This document shows positions 1,110 to 63,804 of a DNA stretch of 64,000 nucleotides, piece by piece (positions within the stretch are counted from its first letter, which is position 1; each line of letters starts with the position of its first letter). The stretch is from Octopus sinensis (taxonomy: Eukaryota): contig NC_043001.1 in the NCBI RefSeq assembly GCF_006345805.1, positions 124,682,001 to 124,746,000 of the forward strand, in the 5' to 3' direction. A model generated the notes under the pieces. It worked only from the letters and a program-made list of their open reading frames with translations. It ran no database searches and was not told where the DNA came from. Made by a program: the position numbers and the translations under genes.

Positions 1110-1506
1110 GCGAGCTGGCAGAAACGTTAGCACGCCGGTCGAAATGCTTAGCGGTATTTCGTCTGCCGTTACGTTCTGAGTTCAAATTCCGCCGAGGTCG
1201 ACTTTGCCTTTCATCCTTTCGGGGTCGATAAAGTACCAGTTACGCACTGGGGTCGATGTAATCGACTTAATACCTATGTCTGTCCCCTCTGTGTTTAGCC
1301 CCTTGTGGGTAATAAAGAAATAGGTATTTCGTCTGCCGTTACGTTGTGAGTTTAAATTCCGCCGAGGTCGACTTTGCCTTTCATCCTTTCGGAGTCGATA
1401 AATTAAGTACCAGTTACGCACTGGGTTCGATGTAATCAACTTAATACCTATGTCTGTCCTTGTTTGTCCCCTCTGTATTTAGCCCCTTGTGGGTAATAAA
1501 GAAATA
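1110..1506 (+). mobile_element. SINE family B tandem dimer with 16-bp target-site duplication
   Basis: tRNA-like head (A box TGGCAGAAACGTT, B box GAGTTCAAATTCC) and central GCCTTTCATCCTTTCGGGGTCGATAAA..AGTACCAG (Meta-domain-like). The second unit is headless. GGTATTACTTTTAGGG is repeated at 1094-1109 and 1507-1522. Confidence 0.9.
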
Positions 1507-1760
1507 GGTATTACTTTTAGGGTGGAGTGTGCTGGGCATTCTGAGCAGCTTTCTAGTTCTTTTATCCAAGTTCTTTTCCTCGGCCTTTGTTCATTTCAGG
1601 GAGAGAGCAGAGTATCTCAATAGGAGCATAGCCTATATATTTATGGCTTTAATGATGTTCACGTCATTTAATTTTGTTTTCAGCACCTTCCTAATTCTCT
1701 TTAGCACCTTCCTTATACTCTTTAGTGACTCCATCTCTCATTCTTCCTTCTATTATCCTA

Positions 1761-5014: not shown

Positions 5015-5166
5015 ACCAGTGCGTAACTGGTACTTAATTTATCGACCCCGAAAGGATGAAAGGCAAAGTCGATCTCGGCAGAATTAGAACTCGGAACGTA
5101 ACGACAGACGAAATACCGCAAAGCATTTCGCCCGGCGTGCTAACGATTCTGCCAGCTCGCCGCCTT
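5015..5166 (-). mobile_element. SINE family B
   Basis: Reverse complement of the head plus central domain. Confidence 0.85.
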
Positions 5167-5829: not shown

Positions 5830-6732
5830 TTTTGGCCAAGGTGTAAGCAAAGTGGTTGGTGCTTGTCGTTGACAGACTAGTGGGTGATGCACAGACTTGC
5901 GGTATCCCCAGCAGAACTATACATAACAACCTCCACGTCATGCGATACACCATAGAGAGGTTTGGTAAAGAACTTGACATGGAGCCCTGATCCATTTGAA
6001 TCAATCGAAAGCTTTTGATAGGGTCGACCATCTATACCTGTAGGCAGTTCACAAGGCGACTTGTTTTAGTCTCGTTTTCAGAGGCTGGATCGCTGCAATG
6101 TACAGCGACATCTGTTCGGTGATCAAAGTAAATGGCCACCTCTCGGAATCGTTTAGCATCTCACGTTCGGTCGGTCAAGGATGCCCATTTTTGCCCCTTC
6201 TCTACGTACTGGCACTCGAGCTATTACTACGGAAGCTGAAGGTTTCGAGTAGCATCCTGCGTGAACTGGCATGCAGAAGTTTAGGCGACGAGCTGGCAGA
6301 ACCGTTAGCACGCCGGGCGAAAAATCATAGCTGTATTTCGTTTGCCGTTATGTTCTGAGTTCAAATTCCGCCGAGGTCGACTTTGATTTTTCATCCTTTC
6401 GGGGTCGATAAATTAAGTACCAGTTACGCACTGGGGTCGATATAATCGACTTAACCTGTCTGTCCTTGTTTGTCCTCTCTGTATTTAGCCCCTTGTGGGT
6501 AGTAAAGAAATAAGAAGTTTAGTGTCAGCGTATACGGACTACGTCGCTGTGATAGTCTCGGCCATCTCGTCAATCAAGATGGTCGGCACTACCCTAAGAG
6601 AATACGAAGCGGTGACAGGAGTAATGATCAATCAGAAGTCAGTGGGCCTGTAGCTCGGCACCTGGAGAGGCAGGCCCATGTCAACCAACAGCGTAGTGGG
6701 GTGGTGGACAGAAGGACCTGTTAAGTTGCTGG
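5830..6732 (+). mobile_element. Tx1/L1-clade LINE reverse-transcriptase fragment (contains a SINE B at 6285-6512)
   Basis: LVGDAQTCGIPSRTIHNNL, LNQSKAFDRVDHLYL, VNGHLSESFSISRSVGQGCPFLPLLYVLALE, VSAYTDY (decayed YADD), LGTWRGRP..EGPVKLL. Confidence 0.85.
6285..6512 (+). mobile_element. SINE family B with 10-bp TSD
   Basis: AGAAGTTTAG at 6275-6284 and 6513-6522; removing the SINE makes the Tx1 RT sequence on either side contiguous. Confidence 0.92.
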
Positions 6733-6836: not shown

Positions 6837-7029
6837 GGCGCATGAGTGGCTGTGTGTTAAGTAGCTTGCTAACCAACCACATGGTTCCGGGTTCAGTTCC
6901 ACTGCGTGGCATCTTGGGGAAATGTCTTCTGCTATAGCCCCGAGCCGACCAATGCCTTGTGAGTGGATTTGGTAGACGGAAACTGAAAGAAGCCTGTCGT
7001 ATATATGTATATATGTGTATATATGTGTA

Positions 7030-9027: not shown

Positions 9028-9425
9028 GCGGCGAACTGGCAGAAACGTTAGCACGCAGGGTGAAATGCTTAGCGGTATTTCGTCTGTCGTTACGTTGTGA
9101 GTTCAAATTCCGCCGAGGTCCACTTTGCCTTTCATCCTCTCGGGGTCGATAAATTAAGTACCAGTTACGTACTGGGGTCGATGTAATCGACTTAATACCT
9201 ATGTCTGTCCTTGTTTGTCCTCTCTGTGTTTAGCCCCTTGTGGGTAGTAAAGGAATAGGTATTTCGTCTGTCTTTACGTTCTGAGTTCAAATTCCGCCGA
9301 GGTCGACTTTGCCTTTCATTCTTTCGGGGTCGATAAGTTAAGTACCAGTTGCGTACTGGAGTCGATCTAATCGACTGGCCCCCTCCCCCAAAAATTTCGG
9401 GCCTTGTGCCTAGTGTAGAAAAGAC
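9028..9425 (+). mobile_element. SINE family B tandem dimer
   Basis: Full unit, then a headless unit joined at GAATA|GGTATTTCG (9257/9258); the second unit has a variant tail. Confidence 0.85.
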
Positions 9426-13869: not shown

Positions 13870-15254
13870 ATACACTGATATATTTAATCCTAGAGTTACT
13901 TGACATAAATTTAATTCTATTGGAATTGACTTCAGATACAATAACCTTGTTATTAATATTTCTAGAGGGTTGGATGGTATTAGCTAAATTAATGTTAGTA
14001 TTAGTAAATGTATTAATATTTAACAGTTTGTTATTATGTGAAGAGATAATTTGTAAGAGATTTTTTGTGTTTGAAAAACCGATCCTAACCGTATGTGAAT
14101 TGATAATAGAGTAATACTCTCTTTACTCTTTTACTCTTTTACTTGTTTCAGTCATTTGACTGCGGCCATGCTGGAGCACCGCATTTAGTCGAGCAACTCG
14201 ACCCCGGGACTTATTCTTTGTAAGCCCAGTACTTATTCTATCGGCCTCTTTTGCCGAACCGCTAAGTGACGGGGACGTAAACACACCAGCATCGGTTGTC
14301 GAGCAATGATAGGGGGACAAACACACACACACACAAACACACACATATATATATACATATATACGACAGGCTTCTTTCAGTTTCCGTCTACCAAATCCAC
14401 TCACAAGGCATTGGTCGGCCCGGGGCTATAGCAGAAGACACTTGCCCAAGATGCCACGCAGCGGGACTGAACCCGGAACCATGTGGTTGGTTAGCCACTC
14501 CTGCGCCTATGAATTTTTTGGAAAATTCCTAACTATAGCTTGACGAAACAGCAGTGGGAGATTAGATTTAATTTGTCTCCCGTAAGGAATTATTAACCAA
14601 ATATTTTTACTACTAATCATAGCGTAATTATTTTTGAAGGTGTTATATTTACTTTTAGAACGATAATAGGGGATTAAATAAAGGTTATCTGCCTTCATTC
14701 ACTTTGTATCGGTGCGTAAGTTATGTTTGTTATCAATAATTCTTTTACGACTAGAAATCTTATCTACATTATTGAATTTACAATTAGACTGAGTAGAATC
14801 AATGTAGAAAATTTTCTCTGTATAACCTGCTTCAATTAAGGCAGAGTTATAGAATTCAGCGTTATCATTGAAAATATCAACTTTAGCAGATAATTTAGAT
14901 AATCTAAATGAAATATTCTTAACTAAGTTCTTAGTAATTGCTCTAGGATGATTACTAAATTTGCTAATGTACTTAAGATTGGTCAACGGTTTACGATATG
15001 GGAAGTAAGAGTACTGTGTAAATTAAGCGTAATATCTAAAAAGTTGGCCTTCGTCATATCGTCATCAAAAACGATTTTTAAGCCCATTCTACTGAAAAAA
15101 TTAACTAAACTATTCTTAACTTTTTGTACCTTTTGGTTGGAAACACTTTGGAGGTAAAGTAAACAATCATCAGACCTAAACACATCCAGTATACGCTCTT
15201 ATTCTGAAAGGAGGAATGTCCAATAGAAGGGAAGGCAAAGGAAGGAAATCAGTT
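13870..15254 (-). mobile_element. Penelope-like element RT fragment (contains a SINE A at 14116-14507)
   Basis: VFRSDD..NFLDITLNL, YISKFSNHPRAITKNL..ISFRLSKLS..FYNSALIEAGY, SRKRII, IWLIIPY..IVRNFPKN, then after the SINE NSHTVRIGFSNTKNLLQIISSHN. These are Penelope RT/linker motifs. Confidence 0.8.
14116..14507 (-). mobile_element. SINE family A
   Basis: Reverse complement of the family A consensus with a short deletion in the head. Confidence 0.9.
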
Positions 15255-15381: not shown

Positions 15382-16582
15382 TGGCTGCCCCCTCGTTATC
15401 GAGTATGGCCATTGCACGAAGCTTAACTGTTACTGGTGCTGTGATCGAATGTGACTTTTTAGCCCAGCTAAAGATCTACAATATCTTGTACAAAATTGGC
15501 AACTAAGACCTTTACTGGTAATAGCCGGCTGTAGTTGTAACTGGGCTTCATGTACCTTTGCATGTCGTTTAAGTCCTCCTGCCGAATTACACTCTCTTCC
15601 ACATGCCCGATAGATATGATTAGTATGGTGTGTTACACCACCACCAGTGGCCAGGTTGTCACTTATCTGTCTCGTTTTATGACAACGAAGATGACTCATG
15701 AGTCCAGCTTTACTGAGGCAGGGTCTTGAACAGACATTGCATGTCAGAATCAAAGGAAGACCCTTCCCTTCTGGAAGTGTAACAGCGATGCCCTTCCTGA
15801 CATCCCTCCTTACTTTCTCATGTGCAACTCGAGATTTTTCAAACGTGGCGGTCCCCTCATACACAATCCTTCTCCACCTGCTACGATCAATAGCTATGCC
15901 TTCCCATGTGTCAGGAGAGATGCAAGCATCTCTTAAGGAAGCCTTCAGCAAGTCCTTATACCACTTTTTTGGTTTATGTGGAGGTCGTTCTCCTTCAGCT
16001 AACTCTCCATAAAAGAGTTGTTTTGGCATCCTTGAATCCTTCATTCTGACCAGATGACCACTCCATCTGAGCCTTTGCTTTAACACAAGAGCTTCTATAC
16101 TTACACACCGAGAGCCTTCGAGTATTTCAAGATCACTGATGCGGTCCTTCCACTTAATGCTATAGATCCGTCTGAGGCACGTCTGATGGAAACGTTCCAG
16201 ATGTTTAAGGTGATATCGATATGTGACCCACGTCTCGCAGGCATAGAGAAGAGAAGGGAGCACACATGCCTTGTACACCTTTATCTTTGTCTTTCTGCAT
16301 GTCTGGCCGACTCCAGAGGCGCTTTTCTAGCCTTCCGAAAGCAACACTTGCTTTTCTAATTCTATATGGAACTTCATCATCCACATTGCCATATCTATTA
16401 ATAGTGCTTCCCAGATAGACAAACTGATCGACTACGTCAAGTCGTTTACCATTCACATAGATATTTGGTACACTATACTGCATACCAGCGGCACTATACT
16501 GCTTACCAGGGCAGGTTGATACATGACAACAGTTTTCTTGAGATTGACTGTCAATCCTAAGGCAGTGCAAGCATCAGAGAAT
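15382..16582 (-). mobile_element. 5'-truncated RTE-clade LINE with C-terminal C2H2 zinc fingers
   Basis: [38 protein letters not shown], one frameshift near 16290, [49 protein letters not shown], three CxxC..HxxxH-type repeats, stop at 15430, short 3' UTR. Confidence 0.92.
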
Positions 16583-26812: not shown

Positions 26813-27226
26813 GGCGCAGGAGTGGCTGTTTGGTAAGTAGCTTGCTAACCAACCACATGGTTCCGGGTTCAGTCCCACTGCGTGGCATCTTGGGCACGTG
26901 TCTTCTGCTATAGCCCCGGGCCGACCAATGCCTTGTGAGTGGATTTGGTAGACGGAAACTGAAAGAAGCCTGTCGTATATATGTATATATATATAAGTGT
27001 GTGTGAATATGTCTGTGTGTCTGTGTTTGTTCCCCTAGCATTGCTTGACAACCGATGCTGGTTTGTTTACGTCTCCGTCACTTAGCGGTTCGGCAAAAGA
27101 GACCGATAGAATAGGTACTGGGCTTACAAAGAATAAGTCCCGGGGTCGATTTGCTCGACTAAAGGCGGTGCTCCAGCATGGCCGCAGTCAAATGACTGAA
27201 ACAAGTAAAAAGAGTAAGAAAAGAGT
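26813..27226 (+). mobile_element. SINE family A, full length
   Basis: As 6837-7257; ends about 32 bp before the exon acceptor at 27258. Confidence 0.92.
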
Positions 27227-36533: not shown

Positions 36534-36765
36534 GGCGAGCTGGCAGAAGAAACGTTAGCACGCCGGGCGAAATGCGTTGCCGTATTTCGTCTGCCGTTAC
36601 GTTCCGAGTTCAAATTCTGCCGAGATGGACTTGCCTTTCATCCTTCCGGGTTCAATAAATTAAGTAGCAGTTACGCACTGGGGTCGATGTAATCGACTTA
36701 ATCCCTTTGTCTGTCCTTGTTTGTCTCCTCTGTGTTAGCCCCTTGTGGGGTAAAGTAAAGAAATA
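36534..36765 (+). mobile_element. SINE family B
   Basis: Head, central domain and tail present. Confidence 0.88.
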
Positions 36766-40286: not shown

Positions 40287-40438
40287 ATATGAGATTAAAG
40301 TGGCTAAAACTTAACACCAAAGATATAGAGCATTGCCTTGAATGTTCTTCTATGGGTTTCTTTCTCTTTCTCTCTCTATCTCTCCCTCCAGTTGTAATTT
40401 CAAGTTTGAAACATTTTTCTTTATGTACTTTTTCACAG

Positions 40439-40884
40439 GAGACATTGAAGTTCTCATGGACTTAGACAAGTTCTTTTATACTGCGACATGTGCCGAAAAC
40501 TGCGAACTTTTACATTTAGAATATGGAGCTTTTGACTCCTTCTTTAACAGACGTCATCGTGATAGCCGACAGCGCTTGTGTGACCGCACTAAGTTAAAGA
40601 TTGAACAGCAATTGCGCCGTATGCCACCCGGCGCCGTTCCACTAATGACGAGTGTAAGACTGCGTCTCGAGAAAACCAAGTCACAACTTATGCAGGCCAA
40701 GAGAAGACTCAAAGGCAAAGATTTGGTACCTGTCAGGAAAATTGTCGATTTACCTCGGGGTCCAATCATTAATAATTATGGGCCGGGAGGACTTTTCTAC
40801 ATCATAGCTTTACAGAACAGACATGTTTGGGAGGCAGCAGCCGAAAGGGAAATGGCTCAAAGACACGAAGCATCTTACAAACAG
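40439..40884 (+). CDS. Coding exon: C-terminal half of a cyclic-nucleotide-binding domain plus helical tail (CNBD2-like protein)
   Basis: Acceptor TTTTCTTTATGTACTTTTTCACAG, donor CAG|GTATCA (phase 0). GDIEVLMDLDKFFYTATCAENCELLHLEYGAFDSFF fits the GE.ALL..ATV.A..DCELLVL...F..LL CNBD pattern; 446 nt with no stops. Confidence 0.8.
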
Positions 40885-41436
40885 GTATCACTTCAGGTCA
40901 GGTTTAACTTTCTAAGTAATCGTTGTTTCAGATATGTATTTATATTTCAGACCGCGCGAATTTTCAAACCAATGATATGAATTGTGGATTTTGATTTTCA
41001 TATATTCTCAGGAAATCGACTAACAACACTTGAACCGTTGGTTCAATAGATATATATATTCTCAAATATATATACAGATTTATACAATGCAAACACAATA
41101 AGACAGCTTTCAGGAAGCTTGCTAAGGCTATAGCTAATCACTACCTCAAGTTTACAACGCAAAACACACATGCACACATCCATCATAGATAGATAATGAA
41201 ATATCGCCCATAGGTTAACGTATACGCAAATACCAAGAAATATATAGTATTATATGTATGAGAAACATTGCTATAAATTTTAAATCTATGTCTATCTAAC
41301 GCTATTATAGGTCTGCAACCACTTATATTGTTGTTGTTACTGTCAGCTATCCATATTACCGCGGATAATAATAACAATGATAATTCCAATATAAATATTC
41401 ACTCCTGAATATTTGCCCTCTCTCTCTCTCTCTCCT

Positions 41437-43087: not shown

Positions 43088-43950
43088 GTGGCGAGCTGGT
43101 TGAATCGCTGGAACTTTGGGCAAAACGTTCAACGGCATTTCTTTCGGTGTTCAAATGCTGCCGAGTTTGAATTTGCTTTTCATCTTTCCGGGCTCGATAA
43201 AATAAGTACCAGTTGAATGCTGGTGTCAACGGAATCGACTTACCCCATCACCCCAAATTACAGGCCTTGTGCCAAAATTTCAAATCAATATTTAGTATGG
43301 AGCAGACAGCAATCTGGCAGAATCGTTAACACGTCAGACAAAATGCTTAGCAGCTTTTCGTCCGTGTTCACAATCAGAATCCAAATGCCACCGAGGTCAA
43401 CTTTGCCTTTCATCCTTTCGGAGTCGATAAAATAAGTACCTATTTCTTTACTACCCACAAGGGGCTAAACACAGAGAGGACAAACAAGGATAGACAAACG
43501 GATTAAGTCGATTATATCGACCCCAGTGAGTAACTGGTACTTATTTAATCGATCCCGAAAGGATGAAAGGCAAAGTCGACCTCGGTGGAATTTGAAATCA
43601 GAACGTAGCGGCAGGCGAAATACCTATTTCTTTACTACCAACAGGGGGCTAAACACAGAGGAGACGAACAAGGGCAGACAAATGGATTAAGTCGATTATA
43701 TCGACCCCAGTGCGAAACTGGTACTTAATTTATCCACCCCGAAAGGATGAAAGGCAAAAATCGACCTTGGCGGAATTTAAACTCAGAAAGTAACGGCAGA
43801 CGAAATACTGCTACGCATTTCGCCCGGCGTGCTAACGATTCTGCCAGCTCGCCACCTTTCGATGAAATAAGTACCAGTTGAAAACTGGGGGTGATGTAAT
43901 CGACTTCACTCCTCTCCTGGTATTGCTAGCCTTGTGCCAAAATTTGAAAT
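43088..43950. mobile_element. Cluster of SINE B copies, including a minus-strand dimer at 43441-43857
   Basis: Repeated heads and central domains on both strands; dimer junction at 43625/43624. Confidence 0.85.
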
Positions 43951-44684: not shown

Positions 44685-44900
44685 CGGCGTGCTGGCAGAA
44701 ACGTTAGCACGCCGGGCGAAATGCTTTGCGGTATTTCGTCTGCCGTTACGTCGTTCTGATTTAAAATTTCGCAGAGATCGACTTTTCCTTTCGTCCCTTT
44801 CAGTGTCGATAAAATAAAGTACCAGTTGGTACAGGGGTTGATGCAATTCACTTACCCTCTCCCCCGAAGTTACTGGCCTTGTGTCAAATTTGAAACCAAT
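44685..44900 (+). mobile_element. SINE family B, variant tail
   Basis: Head and central domain recognisable. Confidence 0.8.
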
Positions 44901-45474: not shown

Positions 45475-45800
45475 TCAAGTTTTGGCACAAGGCCAGCAAT
45501 TTCGGGGGAAAAAGTAGGTCGATTACATCGACTCCAGTATTCAACTGGTACTTATATTATCGGCCCCAAAAGGATGAAAAGTAAAGCTGACCTCGGCGGA
45601 ATTTGAACACAGAACAAAGACGGACAAAATGCCACTAAGCATTATTACCTTTTTCTCCCCTAGGTCGTCAAGCTGGCAGAATTGTTAGCACGCTTAGCGG
45701 CATTTTGTCTGTCTGTACGTTCCAAGTTCAAAACTCGCCGAGGTCAACTTTGCCTTACATTTTTTTCGAGATTGCCGGCCTTGTACCAAAATTTGAAATC
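45475..45800. mobile_element. Two degenerate SINE B copies in opposite orientation
   Basis: Minus copy ~45475-45640, plus copy ~45668-45800. Confidence 0.7.
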
Positions 45801-46062: not shown

Positions 46063-48270
46063 TCAATTGTTCAGTTCTTTATCATTATTATTGAAACTAT
46101 CCAAAAATAACATAGCATCATGGATTTCTTGGACAACCTTAATTTGTTTGATCGCCACATTGCAGTAGTCTGAGTAGGTTTTAGACTGGTCTTGACATTT
46201 GTAAGGCGTAAACCAGGTGTCATGAAATGACTGCATCTGCATTTCTTTCGCAGATTGCAAATAAATCTCAGCTCTATCCAAAATTCCCATTAAATCTTCA
46301 AGGGAATTTTGAAAGTCTTTTATAAACATTTTCTCCGAATGATTTCCTGCAATATTCTGGGAGACTGCTTCAGAAGAAGTTCTAAATACTTTACGCAATG
46401 ACGCTTTCAAATTCGGAAGTAGGTTCTGAAATTTTTTAATAAAATTATTATCAGAAACAGGTGGTGATCTTGCGTTTATAGGATTCTTTATTTCGTTACA
46501 TGGTTTTACATGTGAAGCATTTGAGTCCTGAGTGTTTTGGCTATAGTGACATGACGGTAGTTGACACTCAAATATCTGTTTTCTATGCAGCTCTTGCAGT
46601 TGCTGCCATAATATTTGGTTTCGAAATTGTATCAAATTATTCTCTCCATTACCGTGACTAAAATTATCGGTTTGATTCGCTTGCTTACAAACACATTGGA
46701 ACGCATTTGGACGACTTACCAAGCACGGAATCTGTTGATCTGCTTTAGCCATAGTTACATAGTTTTGTACTGGCTTCATTTGTATTTGTCTCGTGTGTTC
46801 TTGTATTAACTGAGAATGCATTTCTTTCCAAGGAAAATTTAACCCTTGAGATAAATTATCTGGTTGCGGCAAAATACAGTTACTCATGACAGCTTTATTC
46901 TCTTGGCTTAAAACCCGAGACGTAACCAGGTTTGGTCTTAATGCTAAATTTCCAGAAATACCTGGGTTTTTGCCAATTTGCGGAGCGGTGAAATTGCCCG
47001 ATGCCACCGACTGATATCCAACTGTAGTGCATTCCATAGACTCTTTGACAACAATAGCTTCTTTATTAGTTACTGAAACGGCAGCTTTCTTCGTTACTGG
47101 TTCGATTGACAAATTAATGTTTGGTAACACACGTTTGAAAGGTGTGCGAGCTGGATAAGGTACACAGACACTAAACTGATCTTTAACCATTTGACGTGGT
47201 TTTTTATTGATAGGAACTTGCTCTAACTCTTGATCATCTTGCTTTGCAACTAAATCAGGCTGCCAGAAATTAGACGAACCAGCATTGTCCCCTCTACTAT
47301 TAGTAGATGAAGAATTCATAAATACGGGAGGCATATTAAAGGACGTCTTATTTCCATATTCAACTTCGGGTTTTAAATCACCGTTGAATTTTTTCTCATT
47401 ATCCTCACTTCTTTGAAAATTATTGTTGCTATTGTTATTGTGTTCGATATTTTTTACACATTTTCCGGATCTAATGAATTGCTCGTTCTGATCTTTTGAC
47501 ACATTATTTAACTTTCCGATCGATTGTGAGTCTGATTTGTGTTCTAACAAATTTGGAACAGCTGTCGTAAGACTGCTAAAATCTTTCATCTCTCTCTTTT
47601 TCTGATACGTGTTAGGATTAGACACATCCAGTAGGACTACATGAAGTGTTTGACTGCTTTCAGGATCATCTGACGGGAAAAGTTTCGACTCGGCTAACCC
47701 AACATCAGGTAAGGCTGCAGCTTTATTGGCCAAAGTGTTTTGTAATATATTAGGAGCAAAATGCTGATTGATTGACTGCATTTCTTCCTTTGTGTTTGCA
47801 TTTAAGAGAGATATTTCTGTTCGCGAATTATCGATATTCAAACGATCTGGCCGATTTGTTTGCTCTACTGAAGGTTCAATCCTATGTTCACAGATACGTT
47901 TAGTAGTTATCTCTGATTGTTTTGACTCTATCGCTGTTGGGATCGAAGGATTTTTGTCGACATATGCTTTCCCATACAATGTTCTCGAGTTTGTTGAAAC
48001 ATAGTTGCTGCTTCTGTCAGTAACCCTGGAATTGTTTAGTGGCTCAGCGATGCTTCCTTGACAATTTTCCGAAATGGTTTCGTTAATTCGTTCACCAATT
48101 GTAGGACTACGAAACCGATCACCAACGGAGCCATCGCTTCCATTATCCTGTTCAAAGCTGTCATTGTTTCTGTTATTTAATTTAGGAACACAGCCAAGAG
48201 TCGATTTACTTAGTTGACAAGATGCGTCCGGGTTTTGCTGTTTATAAACATTCAGTAGCGGCTTCGACAT
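46063..48270 (-). CDS. MED29: 735-aa uninterrupted ORF: long low-complexity N-terminus plus C-terminal MED29/Intersex-like domain (aa ~607-721, nt 46452-46108)
   Basis: 2208 nt without a stop in AT-rich DNA; ATG has A at -3 and an in-frame TAG two codons upstream. The C-terminus FIKKFQNLLPNLKASLRKVF..QN..FQNSLEDLMGILDRAEIYLQSAKE..QS..P..YSDYCNVAIKQIKVVQEIHDAML aligns by eye with human MED29 as recalled from memory (RYKMLIPQLKESLQTLM..QN..FDKCLEEFYALCDQLELCLRLAHE..QS..P..YPQYLAVIKAQISCAKDIHTALL). Probably a divergent paralogue rather than the orthologue. Confidence 0.8.
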   Translation of the reverse strand: MSKPLLNVYKQQNPDASCQLSKSTLGCVPKLNNRNNDSFEQDNGSDGSVGDRFRSPTIGERINETISENCQGSIAEPLNNSRVTDRSSNYVSTNSRTLYGKAYVDKNPSIPTAIESKQSEITTKRICEHRIEPSVEQTNRPDRLNIDNSRTEISLLNANTKEEMQSINQHFAPNILQNTLANKAAALPDVGLAESKLFPSDDPESSQTLHVVLLDVSNPNTYQKKREMKDFSSLTTAVPNLLEHKSDSQSIGKLNNVSKDQNEQFIRSGKCVKNIEHNNNSNNNFQRSEDNEKKFNGDLKPEVEYGNKTSFNMPPVFMNSSSTNSRGDNAGSSNFWQPDLVAKQDDQELEQVPINKKPRQMVKDQFSVCVPYPARTPFKRVLPNINLSIEPVTKKAAVSVTNKEAIVVKESMECTTVGYQSVASGNFTAPQIGKNPGISGNLALRPNLVTSRVLSQENKAVMSNCILPQPDNLSQGLNFPWKEMHSQLIQEHTRQIQMKPVQNYVTMAKADQQIPCLVSRPNAFQCVCKQANQTDNFSHGNGENNLIQFRNQILWQQLQELHRKQIFECQLPSCHYSQNTQDSNASHVKPCNEIKNPINARSPPVSDNNFIKKFQNLLPNLKASLRKVFRTSSEAVSQNIAGNHSEKMFIKDFQNSLEDLMGILDRAEIYLQSAKEMQMQSFHDTWFTPYKCQDQSKTYSDYCNVAIKQIKVVQEIHDAMLFLDSFNNNDKELNN

Positions 48271-48814
48271 TCTCTATCTGTGGGGGTGGAGTATCTGGTT
48301 AATTGATTTGTTTTGCATAAAAGTATTTTCTGAAACAAACACTCGACTTCGACAACAGTATTAACACCATCTCCGGAAACCCATCTTTGCAATCTTCTAT
48401 TTTGTACAACCAAAACAAAACAACTTGGTACTTACTAAATACATTTCCAATACCGAACCAGCTAGCAGTATTTTTCTTTTCCTCGAATTACCTTTTCATA
48501 CAAAAGGAGGCTTATTTTTAGCAACAAACAATGTCTGTATCTTTTTTGTTATAATTACATTAAAGGAATTGTCAAGCTGCTTCGTTTTTGTATTTCAATA
48601 TTACATAGGCCATTTTGTAAAATATTACTAAAATACAAAACCAGCAGAAAGATAGCTATATAAGTAGTGTTACCGGTGGCAATTCCATTATTTTAAGACA
48701 GATTAAACCATTTCTAAAATCAGGTAAAAAGGAAATATAAATAATGAGTTACTTATATAAGATGTTTGCTACAAAAAATATCTAAAGAACATGGTTCGCT
48801 TCGTTACTCTGCAG

Positions 48815-48916
48815 TTATCTACACAAGAAGTATTAGCCGTTCAAGAATTTGGACCTGGAGATCTCCATTTCCAGCGACTTCGAGGGCCACCTCCCAGTGG
48901 TGTCGGGCGTCAATGA
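48815..48916 (+). CDS. Candidate terminal coding exon of the CNBD gene
   Basis: Acceptor TTCGCTTCGTTACTCTGCAG. The phase-0 frame LSTQEVLAVQEFGPGDLHFQRLRGPPPSGVGRQ* matches the phase-0 donor at 40884. Locally GC-richer, with AATAAA about 210 nt downstream. Confidence 0.45.
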   Translation, partial: LSTQEVLAVQEFGPGDLHFQRLRGPPPSGVGRQ

Positions 48917-49123
48917 AGAGCCCTCGACTACAACAAGACGACCAAAGTTTTTTTTTCCCAAGGTCTGGGATCTCCCGCCTCTAAGCCCTAGACCATCACC
49001 TAATCACCCTTACCCGTCTTGTTGGCTTAACAACAACAACAATAAGAAGCATTATATAAGGATTCCCTTTCTTTTTAATTGTGGTAATAACCAATTATTG
49101 GAAGGAAGACGAATGTTGTACTG

Positions 49124-55993: not shown

Positions 55994-56159
55994 GGCGCAG
56001 GAGTGGCTGTATGGTAAGTAGCTTGTTTACCAACCACATGGTTCCGGGTTCAGTCCCACTGCGTGGCACCTTGGGCAAGTGTCTTCTACTATAGCCTCGG
56101 GCCGACCAAAGCCTTGTGAGTGGATTTGGTAGATGGAAACTGAAAAGAAGCCCGTCGTA

Positions 56160-56205
<46 letters not shown>

Positions 56206-57371: not shown

Positions 57372-57745
57372 TTTATTCTTTTATTCTTTTATTGGTTTCA
57401 GACATTTGACTTCGGGCATGCTGGAGCAGCGCCTTTAATCGAACAAATCGATCCCAGTACTTATTTTTTGAAAGCCTAGTACTTATTCTATAGGTATCTT
57501 TTGCTGAACTGCTAACTTACGGGAACGTGAACACACCACAGACACATAAACATACTCACTCACATATATATACATATATATACGACGGGTTTCATTCAGT
57601 TTCCGTCTACCAAATCCACTCACCAGGCTTTGGTCGGCCCGAGGCAATAGCTGAAGACACTTGCCTAAGGTGCCACGCAGTGAGACTGAACCCGGAACTA
57701 TGTGGTTGATAACCAAGCTACTTACCACACAGCCACTCCTGCGCC
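57372..57745 (-). mobile_element. SINE family A, diverged
   Basis: Reverse complement of the family A consensus. Confidence 0.85.
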
Positions 57746-57917
57746 TATATAAATATATAAAAGGATAAACGTTTTTATTTTTCCTTTAGCTTTTAGAATT
57801 ACTACTATTTTTGCGGTTTGAGTTTTGGCTGCTCTTTCAAGTGAGTCGAATGACCTGTAAGGGTCTTTCCTTAATACTTTGTATATATATATATATATAC
57901 ATATGTGTATATATATA

Positions 57918-57971
<54 letters not shown>

Positions 57972-57975
<4 letters not shown>

Positions 57976-58995
57976 AATGAATATGAGCAAAACTATTACG
58001 AGGAAGTCTGGAAGTGGAAGAATCAACAGAAAACTTACCAAAGCTTTTATTATAGCTCTAAAATCCCAACTCCTAAACGATCCAACCAAATCCATGAGAA
58101 AAATGGCAATTGAACTTGTGGTAGACAACAAGACCATTAGAAATGCAGTAAAATATGATTTGAGGTTAAAATCTTACACAAGAACACTAAAACACTTGTT
58201 GACAACAGCTATGAGGGAAAAGAGATTGAAAAGGTGCAATAAAGTTGCTACATGGTTCGAGAAAAAGTCCTCCATCGTAACGATCTTTTCAAATCAAAAG
58301 ATCTTCACTGTCGATGCTGTTCTGAACCACAGGAATGACAGATTTATCACAAAATCGACAGCTGAGGTTAAGGGGACATTCAAAACAAAACATCCCGCTC
58401 AGTTTTGGCTTTTGGTGTTGTGGCTTCCAATGGAAAGAAAATGCCTATAAAATTCTACAAACTGATGAAAAGATCAATGTTCATACTTACTACAAGACTC
58501 TTAGATACCAGGTATTGCCTTGGCTTAAAGCAAACTACTCAGATGATAATTATGTATGGACACAGGATGGTGCTCCAACCCACACAGCTAGAAAAATACA
58601 AGATTTCTGCAAATTCAACTTTAGCAATTTTTTGGAATCATGTTTATGGCCGCCTTCTATCCCAGATCTAAACTCTCTGGATTATGCTATTTGGGGCACT
58701 TTAGAACATGCTACCACTAGAACATCACACAACAATGTCGACTCTCTTAACGATACTATTAAAGAAGAATGGGAGAAGTTGTCTCCTGAATATTTGAGGT
58801 ACACTTGTGCAAGATTCAGGAAGCGTGCGGAGGCCGTTATTGAGAAAGATGTAGGACACATAGAATAAAAACATTTTCTGTTATGTAAATTTTCTTGTGG
58901 CATATAAATTCTCATGATTTTCAATAAACTAATTGGTCATACACTGTCTTTCAATCCCTGCCTCAAAATATTGTAAATTTTGCTTCCCCACCCTG
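57972..58995 (+). mobile_element. DD37D (maT/Bmmar1-like) transposon, 5'-truncated, frameshifted transposase
   Basis: RKSGSGR..SMRKMAIEL..IFSNQKIF (FSDEK) and WTQDGAPTHTA..WPPSIPDLNSLDY with 37 residues between the Asp residues; stop at 58868. The right TIR ends CACCCTG followed by TA. Confidence 0.9.
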
Positions 58996-60649: not shown

Positions 60650-60950
60650 AGCTGATTAGTGGGGTCGATGCGACCGACTTACCATCTCTCCCTAAATTGC
60701 TGGCCTTGTGCCAAAATTTGAAACCAGTATATAAGCCGATATTAAGGCAGCGAGATGGCAAAACCGTTAGTACGCCAGGGAAAATGCTTAGCGGCATTTC
60801 ATCCGTCTTTACGCTCTGAATTCAAATTCCGCAGAGGTCGACCTTACATCGCATCCTTTCGGGGTCGATAAGATAAGTATCATTTGAGCAGCGGTTAATC
60901 GGCTCACTTCTCCTCCGAACTTGCTGGCTTTGTGCCAAAATTTGAAATAT
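60650..60950 (+). mobile_element. Degenerate SINE B copies
   Basis: Head at ~60750 and central domain; tail fragment at 60650-60725. Confidence 0.7.
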
Positions 60951-62645: not shown

Positions 62646-63804
62646 CAGGATGTGTGTGTGTACGTGAATGTAATTTATGCATGTCCACAAACTAGCACGC
62701 ATATCGCTCCGATTTTAGGAGGACATTGGTCACGACAATGGCTGTGCTTTTGTCAACTTATTTTTCCCGAGGCACACCCGGATAGCGGTAAAAATCGATT
62801 TTCACCATAACGTTTACCAATTTACACGTCAGTGAAATCCGTATGGTTCCTAACATGAGTTAAGTCCCCTGTCTTGCATATAGATTAATTCACCCTACTA
62901 CAATGCCTCCGAAAGAAATTAGATTTGGAATACCTAAGCAATCTCAGCGTAGGAAAAGAGAAAGAGCTGAAGAGACTAACTATCAGCGGACCCATTAGTA
63001 AAATATAACTTTTTGGGCCGAAGCCTGGCAATAAGAGCTTGCAGATATTCCGCTACAAAACATTCAATAATATCGAAGCAGTAACTTTCATAAATCAGGG
63101 TGTAATTTTTTAAGACACTTTCTGAACCCAGTCGACGACGGGTATTTCTGCTAGTATATATATAAATAACGGGCATTTTTTAGTTACTGTCAACCAGATC
63201 CACTTACAAGGCTTTGATCAGCCCACCCAAGGTGCTACGCAGTGGGACTGAACCCAGAACCATATGGTTGAGAAGGAAGCTTCTTAGTACAAAGCTACAC
63301 CTGCGCCTTTTCAAGTATTTTTTACGTAATTTGAAACAAAATTATTTCGATGCATTTAGTGCATAAATTCAAAACCTTTTTTATATTTTATCCTATAAAG
63401 ATAAGGGTCGTCTGTCAGTCATCAATGATTACCATCTCAACAACTATGTTTAAGCTGGAAAAGATTTTATGAAGAAATCTAGCAATTTAATTATTCATCA
63501 AGTCTCCTCTCTCCACAATACCAATGTTTATTCACGGAAAAGGCTACCATTTAAGGTCGAGACAAGTTAACAGAGGTGTCGTTACAAAGTTTGCTATCAT
63601 TATGCAAAAAAACTGGAAGTAATATTGCACAACATATCCGACCTCTAGCAGTTCTGCTAATGTATTATCACTCTTTTATTGACCCCGTAACAATAAAAAT
63701 CAAAGTTGACCCCGATAGGATTTGAACTTCGAGCCCAAAGAACGTGTACAAATACTGTAGGCTATTCGTAATAAAAGCTCCAACAATTTGCTGCCTATAG
63801 TTTT

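What the first reader, a model, noticed from the sequence alone, without database searches (positions are those of the whole stretch)
46063..48270. Intronless, greatly extended MED29/Intersex-like gene (735 aa)
Seen: a 2208-nt stop-free ORF whose last ~115 residues carry the helical pattern of MED29 (KF..L.P.LK.SL, F...LE....D..E..L..A.E...QS, Y..Y..V...QI....IH.A.L). Established: MED29 is a ~200-aa Mediator subunit, and its Drosophila orthologue Intersex is the cofactor of female Doublesex. Inference: a single-exon CDS, strong divergence and a ~600-aa novel N-terminus suggest a retro-duplicated paralogue kept under selection. It could act as a tissue-specific (e.g. germline) Mediator variant or a DM-domain cofactor in cephalopods. 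The human sequence used for comparison was recalled from memory.
Basis: partly seen in the sequence, partly recalled or inferred. Interest (0 to 1): 0.85.

Follow-up and report, generated by a model that had tools for sequence, protein, structure and literature searches.

The report
Octopod long MED29 paralogue gene
Octopuses and the argonaut carry, besides their normal 160-residue Mediator subunit MED29, a second fast-evolving copy with about 600 extra, probably unstructured residues in front, which may be an alternative Mediator tail subunit but has not been studied.

Summary
Window 46063-48270 (minus strand) is an intact 735-codon ORF. Its last ~115 residues match Pfam Med29 above the curated cut-off, match canonical MED29s profile-to-profile (99.3%), and fold into the MED29 three-helix shape.

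It is a paralogue, not an extended orthologue. O. bimaculoides, O. vulgaris and Argonauta hians each also encode a canonical 159-161 aa MED29 elsewhere in the genome; O. sinensis has one too.

The long form is kept full-length in O. vulgaris, O. bimaculoides, an unnamed octopod and, shortened at the N-terminus, Argonauta. Selection is weak but significant (dN/dS about 0.5, against 0.03-0.05 for the canonical copy). The N-terminal ~600 residues have no detectable relatives and are predicted unstructured.

The retro-duplication inference is not supported as argued. All cephalopod canonical MED29 coding sequences examined are also single-exon, while the limpet Lottia has three introns in the domain, so intronlessness does not discriminate.

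The gene may have a short 5'UTR intron behind a highly conserved upstream block. No squid counterpart was found. Germline or Doublesex-cofactor roles remain untested speculation.

Best reading: an octopod-restricted alternative or competing Mediator upper-tail subunit. Gene models already exist in public databases, but I found no published description. Interest is moderate.

The parts
46063..48270 (-). Complete single-exon coding sequence of the long MED29 paralogue (735 aa plus stop)
   Evidence: ORF listing. Colinear full-length orthologues: O. vulgaris 99%, O. bimaculoides 86-87%, unnamed octopod 63-71%, Argonauta 36%. All indels between species are in frame. dN/dS is about 0.5 and significantly below 1.
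46108..46452 (-). Med29 domain (aa 607-721): two-helix coiled coil plus a third helix
   Evidence: Pfam PF11568 at 35-44 bits against a gathering score of 25.2. hhalign against canonical MED29s gives 99.3%, E 2.8e-20. AF2 predicts three helices, and the top two Foldseek PDB hits are the MED29 chains 6w1s_X and 7emf_2. The long form keeps 15 of 22 positions that are invariant in short MED29s.
46453..48270 (-). N-terminal extension (aa 1-606), rich in N/S/Q/K/P and predicted unstructured
   Evidence: No Pfam family above cut-off. No PDB sequence relatives. No homologues outside the octopod long forms. AF2 pLDDT is below 50 for aa 1-610, with only a 4-sequence alignment. Composition. dN/dS is about 0.5.
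47536..47829 (-). Best-conserved block of the extension (aa 148-245), including the motif QTLHVVLL(D/N)VS.P that is invariant from Octopus to Argonauta
   Evidence: Alignment A2. Identity to Argonauta is 40-46% here, against 20-30% in the rest of the extension. The lowest dN/dS of the N-terminal part, 0.16-0.29, falls in codons 151-300.
48656..48835 (-). Conserved non-coding block upstream of the ORF, ending in TATATAG (48656-48662); putative promoter or first non-coding exon
   Evidence: This is the most conserved stretch of the locus: 89-91% identity to the distant octopod against about 80% for the CDS. A core of about 55 nt is nearly invariant even in Argonauta, where synonymous sites are saturated. 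Function is inferred.
48330..48435 (-). Putative 106-nt 5'UTR intron (TTTA|GTAAGTACC ... GTTTGTTTCAG|AAAATAC), 60 nt before the ATG
   Evidence: The donor consensus is conserved in all four species, and an acceptor-like pyrimidine tract plus AG is present in all. This is inference from sequence only, with no transcript data.

Best explanation
This is a protein-coding, octopod-restricted paralogue of the Mediator tail subunit MED29 (call it MED29-long). It arose by duplication of a MED29 gene that probably already lacked coding-sequence introns, before Octopus and Argonauta split. It gained, or was fused to, about 600 residues of low-complexity, probably disordered sequence in front of the Med29 helices.

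Shown: the domain identity, the paralogy, the conservation of the open frame, the weak purifying selection and the roughly six-fold faster protein evolution than the canonical copy.

Inferred: because it keeps the three-helix Med29 module and most family-invariant core residues, it most likely still pairs with MED27 in the Mediator upper tail. There it would act as an alternative to canonical MED29 and present its long disordered arm as an extra docking surface for transcription factors. It could also exist partly as a free pool that competes for MED29 partners, as the Candida Tlo/Med2 paralogues do.
For: Domain.

Paralogy: canonical MED29 is XP_014784275.1 on CM046609.1, while the long form XP_052823923.1 is on CM046605.1 in O. 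bimaculoides. Both forms are also present in O. vulgaris and Argonauta hians.

Selection: dN/dS is 0.48-0.52 overall (Fisher p 1.5e-8 and 3e-4), with all indels in frame. For the same species pair, O. bimaculoides-Argonauta, the canonical copy has dN 0.07-0.08 and omega 0.03-0.05. The long copy has dN 0.40 and omega 0.27 in the domain, and dN 0.67 and omega 0.52 in the N-terminal part.

Phylogeny: the long forms form one clade at 100% bootstrap. They share LEDL and FTP states with cephalopod canonical MED29s, where gastropods and human have LEEF and (Y/H/N)(T/S)P.

Regulation: a conserved upstream non-coding block suggests a maintained promoter.

Structure: in mammalian Mediator, MED29 is a two-helix coiled coil plus a third helix that pairs with MED27 (PMC7921410). 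Lineage-specific paralogues of the Med2/Med29 subunit are known (PMC2475620; PMC5908203).
Against: No transcript or protein evidence could be examined, so expression, tissue pattern and the 5'UTR intron are unverified.

The Med29 score is low: 35-44 bits against 130 bits for the canonical octopus protein, and only 14.8 bits, below cut-off, for the Argonauta long form. Two inter-helix loops are shortened, and 7 of 22 family-invariant positions are changed or deleted. Binding to MED27 and its partners may therefore be altered or lost.

An omega of about 0.5 is weak constraint. The five substitutions between the window and O. vulgaris are all non-synonymous, which is not significant (P about 0.3).

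The disorder call rests on a 4-sequence alignment.
Confidence: 0.6

Rival explanations
1. Retrogene: the long copy arose by reverse transcription of a spliced MED29 mRNA, inserted elsewhere, and recruited upstream sequence as new coding N-terminus and promoter.
For: The CDS is a single exon in all species. It lies on a different chromosome from the canonical gene. Lottia MED29 has three introns inside the domain, so at least one complete intron loss or retroposition happened on the cephalopod line.
Against: The canonical cephalopod MED29 CDSs are also single-exon: Octopus, Argonauta and an unnamed presumed cephalopod. Lack of introns therefore does not distinguish RNA-based from DNA-based duplication. 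No poly(A) remnant is visible in the 360 nt after the stop codon, and none would be expected after saturation of silent sites. The locus may itself contain a 5'UTR intron.
Confidence: 0.3
2. Free decoy or adaptor outside Mediator: the diverged Med29 helices no longer assemble into the tail. Instead they titrate MED27/MED15-type partners or other helical-bundle proteins, or the protein works mainly through its disordered N-terminal region.
For: The domain evolves fast, and in Argonauta it falls below the family cut-off. Loops are shortened and invariant Q/A/K positions replaced. The best-conserved N-terminal motif (QTLHVVLLDVS) is as well kept as the domain. A free pool is described for Candida Tlo/Med2 paralogues; that detail is from my own knowledge, and the family itself is cited.
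Against: The core hydrophobic and signature positions of all three helices are kept across Octopus and Argonauta. The domain has the lowest omega of the protein in two of three comparisons.
Confidence: 0.25
3. Extended orthologue: this is the only MED29 of octopods, simply lengthened.
For: UniRef automatically names the O. vulgaris protein 'Mediator of RNA polymerase II transcription subunit 29'.
Against: Canonical 159-161 aa MED29 genes scoring 130 bits against Pfam exist in the same genomes.
Confidence: 0.02
4. Decaying pseudogene or chance ORF with no function.
For: High dN/dS (about 0.5). All five window-versus-O. vulgaris differences are non-synonymous. The first ~147 aa are lost in Argonauta through a frameshift at the old start.
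Against: P about 2e-24 for a chance ORF. The frame is open over 2.0-2.2 kb in four lineages whose silent sites are saturated. Synonymous change exceeds non-synonymous change with p 1.5e-8. The upstream block is conserved.
Confidence: 0.04

Closest known systems
Canonical metazoan MED29 / Drosophila Intersex (Pfam PF11568; human MED29 in PDB 7EMF, mouse in 6W1S)
   Same: Homologous C-terminal module. It has the same three-helix layout: a two-helix coiled coil, a loop and a third helix. It keeps signature positions (LP.LK.SL, F..LE....D..E..L, Y..Y....QI).
   Different: It is 735 aa against 160-240 aa, with a ~600-aa unrelated N-terminal extension. Both inter-helix loops are shorter. Protein evolution is about six times faster and omega about ten times higher than in the canonical octopod copy. 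It coexists with a canonical copy. Mediator incorporation and any Doublesex link are untested.
Candida albicans TLO family (10-15 paralogues of Med2, the fungal homologue of MED29)
   Same: A lineage-specific duplication of the Med2/Med29 tail subunit. A conserved Mediator-anchoring domain is joined to a variable region, with functional diversification proposed (PMC2475620; PMC5908203 and PMC4214616).
   Different: Here there is one extra copy, not a subtelomeric family. The variable region is N-terminal and far longer. The lineage is animal. This is an analogy of mechanism only, not shared descent of the duplication.
Vertebrate Mediator paralogue pairs (MED12/MED12L, MED13/MED13L, CDK8/CDK19) and nematode Med1/Med27 or fish Med30 duplicates
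   Same: Alternative, presumably mutually exclusive, versions of one Mediator subunit within a lineage (PMC2475620).
   Different: Those pairs keep similar length and architecture and mostly lie in the kinase module. Here the copy is highly diverged, with a large added disordered region in an upper-tail subunit.

Membership tests
Med29 family (Pfam PF11568) | Profile match at or above the curated gathering score | tested here: met
   35.3 bits for the full protein and 44 bits for the last 155 aa, against 25.2. The unnamed octopod scores 37.5 bits. The Argonauta long form scores only 14.8 bits, so that orthologue alone would fail. hhalign against canonical MED29s gives 99.3%.
Med29 family (Pfam PF11568) | Fold: N-terminal two-helix coiled coil, short loop, third helix (PMC7921410) | tested here: met
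   AF2 model with helices 30-61, 66-107 and 119-153 of the 155-aa segment, mean pLDDT 73. The top two Foldseek PDB hits are MED29 chains, but with weak E-values of 0.012-0.017 and TM 0.45-0.61.
Med29 family (Pfam PF11568) | Retention of residues invariant in short MED29s | tested here: inconclusive
   15 of 22 are kept, 2 lie in deleted loops and 5 are substituted. Which of them contact MED27/MED28/MED30/MED15 was not examined.
Med29 family (Pfam PF11568) | Being a stoichiometric subunit of Mediator, paired with MED27 | not testable with these tools
   Needs purification, co-IP or multimer modelling with octopus MED27.
Med29 family (Pfam PF11568) | Typical size of about 130-240 aa with a short Q/P-rich N-terminus | tested here: not met
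   735 aa, against 129-240 aa for the canonical cephalopod, gastropod and other short MED29s found here.
Retrogene (processed retrocopy) | Lacks introns that the parental gene has | tested here: inconclusive
   The long CDS has none. Canonical cephalopod CDSs have none either. Lottia has three.
Retrogene (processed retrocopy) | Poly(A) remnant and target-site duplications | tested here: inconclusive
   None is seen in the 360 nt after the stop codon, and they would be expected to be erased at this age (dS above 1.3 to Argonauta).
Retrogene (processed retrocopy) | Located away from the parental locus | tested here: met
   O. bimaculoides CM046605.1 against CM046609.1. O. vulgaris OX597818.1 (147.5 Mb) against a 119.3-Mb record. 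Argonauta contigs BAAFZT010000040.1 against BAAFZT010000018.1.
Intersex-type Doublesex cofactor | Binding to a sex-specific DM-domain protein isoform | not testable with these tools
   No data. Z-linkage was not tested: O. bimaculoides chromosome 17 is the Z (PMC10925132), and the mapping of CM046605.1 to a chromosome number was not verified.

The most novel reading that the evidence does not exclude
Octopods evolved a second, architecturally new Mediator upper-tail subunit. Its MED29 anchoring module carries a ~600-residue disordered arm with its own conserved short motifs (for example QTLHVVLLDVS). This would give a tissue- or stage-specific Mediator variant that recruits a distinct set of transcription factors, a lineage-specific rewiring of the general transcription machinery in the clade known for other regulatory innovations.
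Probability: 0.3. Interest if true: 0.6.

Novelty: new variant of a known kind. Interest (0 to 1): 0.4.

Why it matters
Mediator tail subunits are where gene-specific activators dock. Extra paralogues of them (Candida TLO/Med2, plant MED15s, vertebrate kinase-module pairs) are a recognised way to diversify transcriptional control.

Among the animal examples in the one comparative survey I consulted (PMC2475620), duplicated subunits are Med1, Med12, Med13, Cdk8, Med27 and Med30, not MED29. My literature searches also found no description of a cephalopod MED29 paralogue.

If the long form really enters Mediator, it offers a natural experiment: what a large disordered arm on the MED27-MED29 pair does. 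It would also be a candidate contributor to octopod-specific gene regulation. If it does not, it is one more fast-evolving lineage-restricted gene with a borrowed helical domain.

It also corrects database naming. UniRef labels the O. vulgaris long protein simply as MED29, although the true orthologue is the 160-aa protein.

Tried and rejected
1. Searches for relatives of the whole protein and of a four-species alignment returned only octopod long forms. The word index even missed Argonauta's own protein, so absence from squids is not proven.

2. An exhaustive phmmer of the domain against 1.84 billion representatives gave only 6 hits: long forms plus short MED29s.

3. I tried to find transcript-like contigs. 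The window's exact protein is not on record. The Logan contigs for the unnamed octopod are genomic: they align to the window's flanks, include the putative intron and end in repeats.

4. The neighbour-joining tree could not place the long clade relative to cephalopod canonical MED29s (31% bootstrap), so the duplication date is bounded only by presence in Octopus and Argonauta.

5. Synteny between the Octopus and Argonauta loci: no shared flanking genes within +-10 kb, only repeats.

6. Origin of the N-terminal extension: Pfam gave only a sub-threshold tRNA_synthFbeta CLM hit at aa 144-244, seen in two orthologues but not Argonauta and judged spurious. There were no PDB relatives and no tandem repeats. 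The extension is not built from the window's dispersed repeats.

7. The full-length AF2 model is too poor for a fold search, so none was run on it.

8. Rfam and tRNA scans of the window were empty.

9. Literature searches for a described cephalopod MED29 paralogue found nothing. The C. elegans MDT-29 paper gave no data on protein architecture.
Full report
**Observation**

The window holds an ATG-initiated ORF of 735 codons at 46063..48270 on the minus strand. It is 2.6 times longer than any other ORF in the 64 kb. At the window's composition (34% G+C), stops are expected at 7.2% of codons, so a run of 735 open codons has a probability of about 2e-24. A TAG two codons upstream closes the frame. 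The feature is real and sits exactly at the stated coordinates.

**Domain identity**

- Pfam Med29 (PF11568) matches aa 611-721 at 35.3 bits, or 44 bits when only the last 155 aa are scanned. The gathering score is 25.2.
- The only PDB sequence hits are human and mouse MED29, at E about 4e-4, aligned over aa 607-721.
- A profile of the four long-form C-termini aligns to a profile of eight short MED29s with 99.3% probability (E 2.8e-20, 120 columns).
- An AlphaFold2 model of the last 155 aa, built on a 12-sequence alignment with mean pLDDT 73, has three long helices.
- Its two best Foldseek matches in the PDB are the MED29 chains of mouse (6w1s_X) and human (7emf_2) Mediator. The E-values are weak (0.012-0.017), as is usual for all-helical folds.
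- This layout is the one described for MED29 in the mammalian complex: a two-helix coiled coil, a loop and a third helix, paired with MED27 (PMC7921410).
- Of 22 positions invariant in nine short MED29s, the long form keeps 15. Two lie in loops that are deleted and five are substituted.

**Relatives of the whole protein**

Full-length, colinear relatives exist only in octopods:

| Species | Accession | Length | Identity to window |
|---|---|---|---|
| O. vulgaris | CAI9723474.1 | 734 aa | 99% |
| O. bimaculoides | XP_052823923.1 | 736 aa | 86-87% |
| Unnamed octopod (run SRR11869385) | none | 669 aa | 63-71% |
| Argonauta hians | GAB1604838.1 | 675 aa | 36% overall, 44-48% in the domain |

- In all of them the coding sequence is one uninterrupted stretch of DNA.
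- The window is 99.2% identical to the O. vulgaris assembly over 8 kb. It therefore comes from O. vulgaris or a very close relative. The exact 735-aa protein is not in the collections.
- Argonauta lacks the first ~147 residues. A remnant of the Octopus start codon region is still recognisable but frameshifted, and its protein carries an extra N/D-rich C-terminal tail.

**Paralogue or orthologue**

The decisive result is that the same genomes also encode a canonical MED29:

| Species | Canonical MED29 | Length |
|---|---|---|
| O. bimaculoides | XP_014784275.1 (on CM046609.1; the long gene is on CM046605.1) | 159 aa |
| O. sinensis | XP_029641831.1 | 159 aa |
| O. vulgaris | CAI9727648.1 | 160 aa |
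| Argonauta hians | GAB1600979.1 | 161 aa |

- The canonical octopus protein scores 130 bits against Pfam Med29.
- The window's gene is therefore a second, diverged copy that already existed before Octopus and Argonauta separated.
- In a neighbour-joining tree of 125 domain columns, the long forms are one clade (100%) and the cephalopod canonical forms another (100%). Their mutual position is unresolved (31%).
- Two states are shared by long and cephalopod canonical forms: LEDL instead of LEEF, and FTP instead of (Y/H/N)(T/S)P. They hint at an origin within cephalopods.
- No long form was found outside octopods. The searches cannot prove absence, because one search failed to return even the Argonauta protein.

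**Selection**

- Between the window and the distant octopod, dN is 0.16 and dS 0.33 (omega 0.48).
- Between the window and O. bimaculoides, dN is 0.058 and dS 0.114 (omega 0.51).
- Synonymous change exceeds non-synonymous change with p = 1.5e-8 and 3e-4 respectively. All length differences are in frame.
- For the same species pair (O. bimaculoides-Argonauta), the canonical gene has dN 0.07-0.08 and omega 0.03-0.05.
- The long gene has dN 0.40 and omega 0.27 in the domain, and dN 0.67 and omega 0.52 in the N-terminal part.
- The long copy is thus constrained, but far more weakly, and its protein evolves about six times faster.

**The N-terminal 600 residues**

- They have no Pfam family above cut-off, no PDB sequence relatives and no tandem repeats.
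- They are rich in N, S, Q, K and P.
- In a full-length AlphaFold2 model, pLDDT is below 50 throughout aa 1-610. The alignment had only four sequences, which weakens this.
- Conservation is uneven. Residues 148-245 are 40-46% identical to Argonauta and include the invariant QTLHVVLL(D/N)VS.P. Codons 151-300 have the lowest omega of the extension, 0.16-0.29.
- I read the extension as an intrinsically disordered region carrying a few short conserved motifs. That is an inference.

**Gene structure and the retrogene idea**

- Lottia gigantea MED29 is spliced, with four coding exons and three introns inside the domain.
- Every cephalopod canonical MED29 coding sequence examined is a single exon: O. 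bimaculoides, Argonauta and an unnamed ENA contig that is 67% identical and presumably another cephalopod.
- Intron loss therefore characterises cephalopod MED29 in general. It cannot show that the long copy in particular arose by retroposition. Duplication of an already intronless gene, by DNA or by RNA, fits equally well.
- The long gene may also not be intronless. The most conserved part of the whole locus is a non-coding block at 48835-48656, at 89-91% identity to the distant octopod against about 80% for the coding sequence. A core of about 55 nt is nearly invariant even in Argonauta. The block ends in TATATAG.
- About 220 nt further on there is a perfect donor consensus (TTTA|GTAAGTACC, GT at 48435) conserved in all four species. 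It is followed by a pyrimidine tract and CAG (AG at 48330), 60 nt before the ATG.
- This suggests a promoter, a short non-coding first exon and a 106-nt 5'UTR intron. No transcript data could be examined.

**Mechanism**

Shown: a conserved, selected, octopod-restricted MED29 paralogue with an intact Med29 module and a long, unique N-terminal region.

Inferred, as the most likely mechanism: the Med29 helices still pair with MED27 and pack with MED28/MED30/MED15 in the upper tail (PMC7921410). The protein would then replace canonical MED29 in a subset of Mediator complexes and add a long flexible arm for factor recruitment.

The main rival is that the diverged module no longer assembles and the protein acts as a free competitor or adaptor. 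The Argonauta orthologue, whose domain has dropped below the Pfam cut-off, keeps this rival alive.

Lineage-specific paralogues of this very subunit family are known. Candida albicans has 10-15 TLO/Med2 genes and Trichomonas has three Med29/Med2 copies (PMC2475620; PMC5908203, PMC4214616). Among the animals in that one survey, duplicates were reported for Med1, Med12, Med13, Cdk8, Med27 and Med30, not Med29.

**Novelty and verdict**

- Gene models for the long form already sit in NCBI and UniProt. They are labelled 'uncharacterized', 'hypothetical' or, misleadingly, simply 'MED29'. I found no paper describing them.
- The feature is a new variant of a known kind: a Med29-family member by profile and fold, with a new architecture and paralogue status.
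Its paralogue and selection inferences are supported. Its retro-duplication argument does not hold as stated. Its functional suggestions (germline variant, Doublesex cofactor) remain untested.
- Interest is moderate (0.4).

Noticed in passing
window 48656-48835 (minus strand); L004 9299-9367: This non-coding block upstream of the ORF is more conserved than the coding sequence. It is 89-91% identical to the distant octopod and has a ~55-nt core nearly invariant in Argonauta. It ends in TATATAG and is probably the promoter or first exon of the long MED29 gene.
   Followed up: partly
window 48045-48270 (codons 1-75): Synonymous divergence in the first 75 codons is about five times lower than in the rest of the gene (dS 0.07 against about 0.33 to the distant octopod). 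Argonauta keeps a recognisable, frameshifted remnant of this start that now forms a 10-codon upstream ORF. This suggests constraint at the nucleotide level.
   Followed up: partly
window 48836-49041: A G+C-rich insertion of about 200 bp is present in the window and in O. vulgaris but absent from O. bimaculoides and the distant octopod. It is unique within the window and carries a 91-aa ORF on the plus strand.
   Followed up: partly
window 6874-7012, 14351-14489, 26850-26988, 56031-56170, 57568-57708 (also 63155-63270); L004 5288-5394 and 12903-13013: A dispersed repeat of about 140 bp, with copies 90-94% alike in the window. Its ~110-bp core is 82-90% identical to copies in Argonauta although silent sites between the two genera are saturated. 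It is SINE-like, with no tRNA or Rfam match.
   Followed up: partly
window 1153-1510, 5016-5117, 6333-6512, 9074-9376, 36582-36765, 43150-43808, 44730-44854, 45515-45615, 60810-60885: A second dispersed or tandemly clustered repeat family of about 190 bp, at 78-90% identity. It is also present around the O. bimaculoides and Argonauta loci, and it flanks the long MED29 gene on its 3' side.
   Followed up: no
window 40342-40980 (+), conserved block 40359-41398: A 212-aa ORF in a block 92% identical to O. bimaculoides. It is apparently an exon of the convergent neighbour gene, a 547-aa product with only a faint cNMP_binding hit in O. bimaculoides. The ORF itself has no Pfam or PDB match.
   Followed up: partly
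window 57905-58868 (+): Two overlapping ORFs have weak, sub-threshold hits to the Tc3 transposase HTH and the DDE_3 endonuclease. This is probably a decayed Tc1/mariner-type transposon.
   Followed up: no
window 15430-16278 (-): A 282-aa ORF ends in a weak C2H2 / SUZ12-like zinc-finger match below the Pfam cut-offs.
   Followed up: no
L003, L006, L007 (canonical MED29 loci) against L005 (Lottia): The canonical MED29 coding sequence is a single exon in the cephalopods examined, whereas the limpet gene has three introns within the domain. This implies complete intron loss, or replacement by a retrocopy, of an essential Mediator gene on the cephalopod stem.
   Followed up: partly
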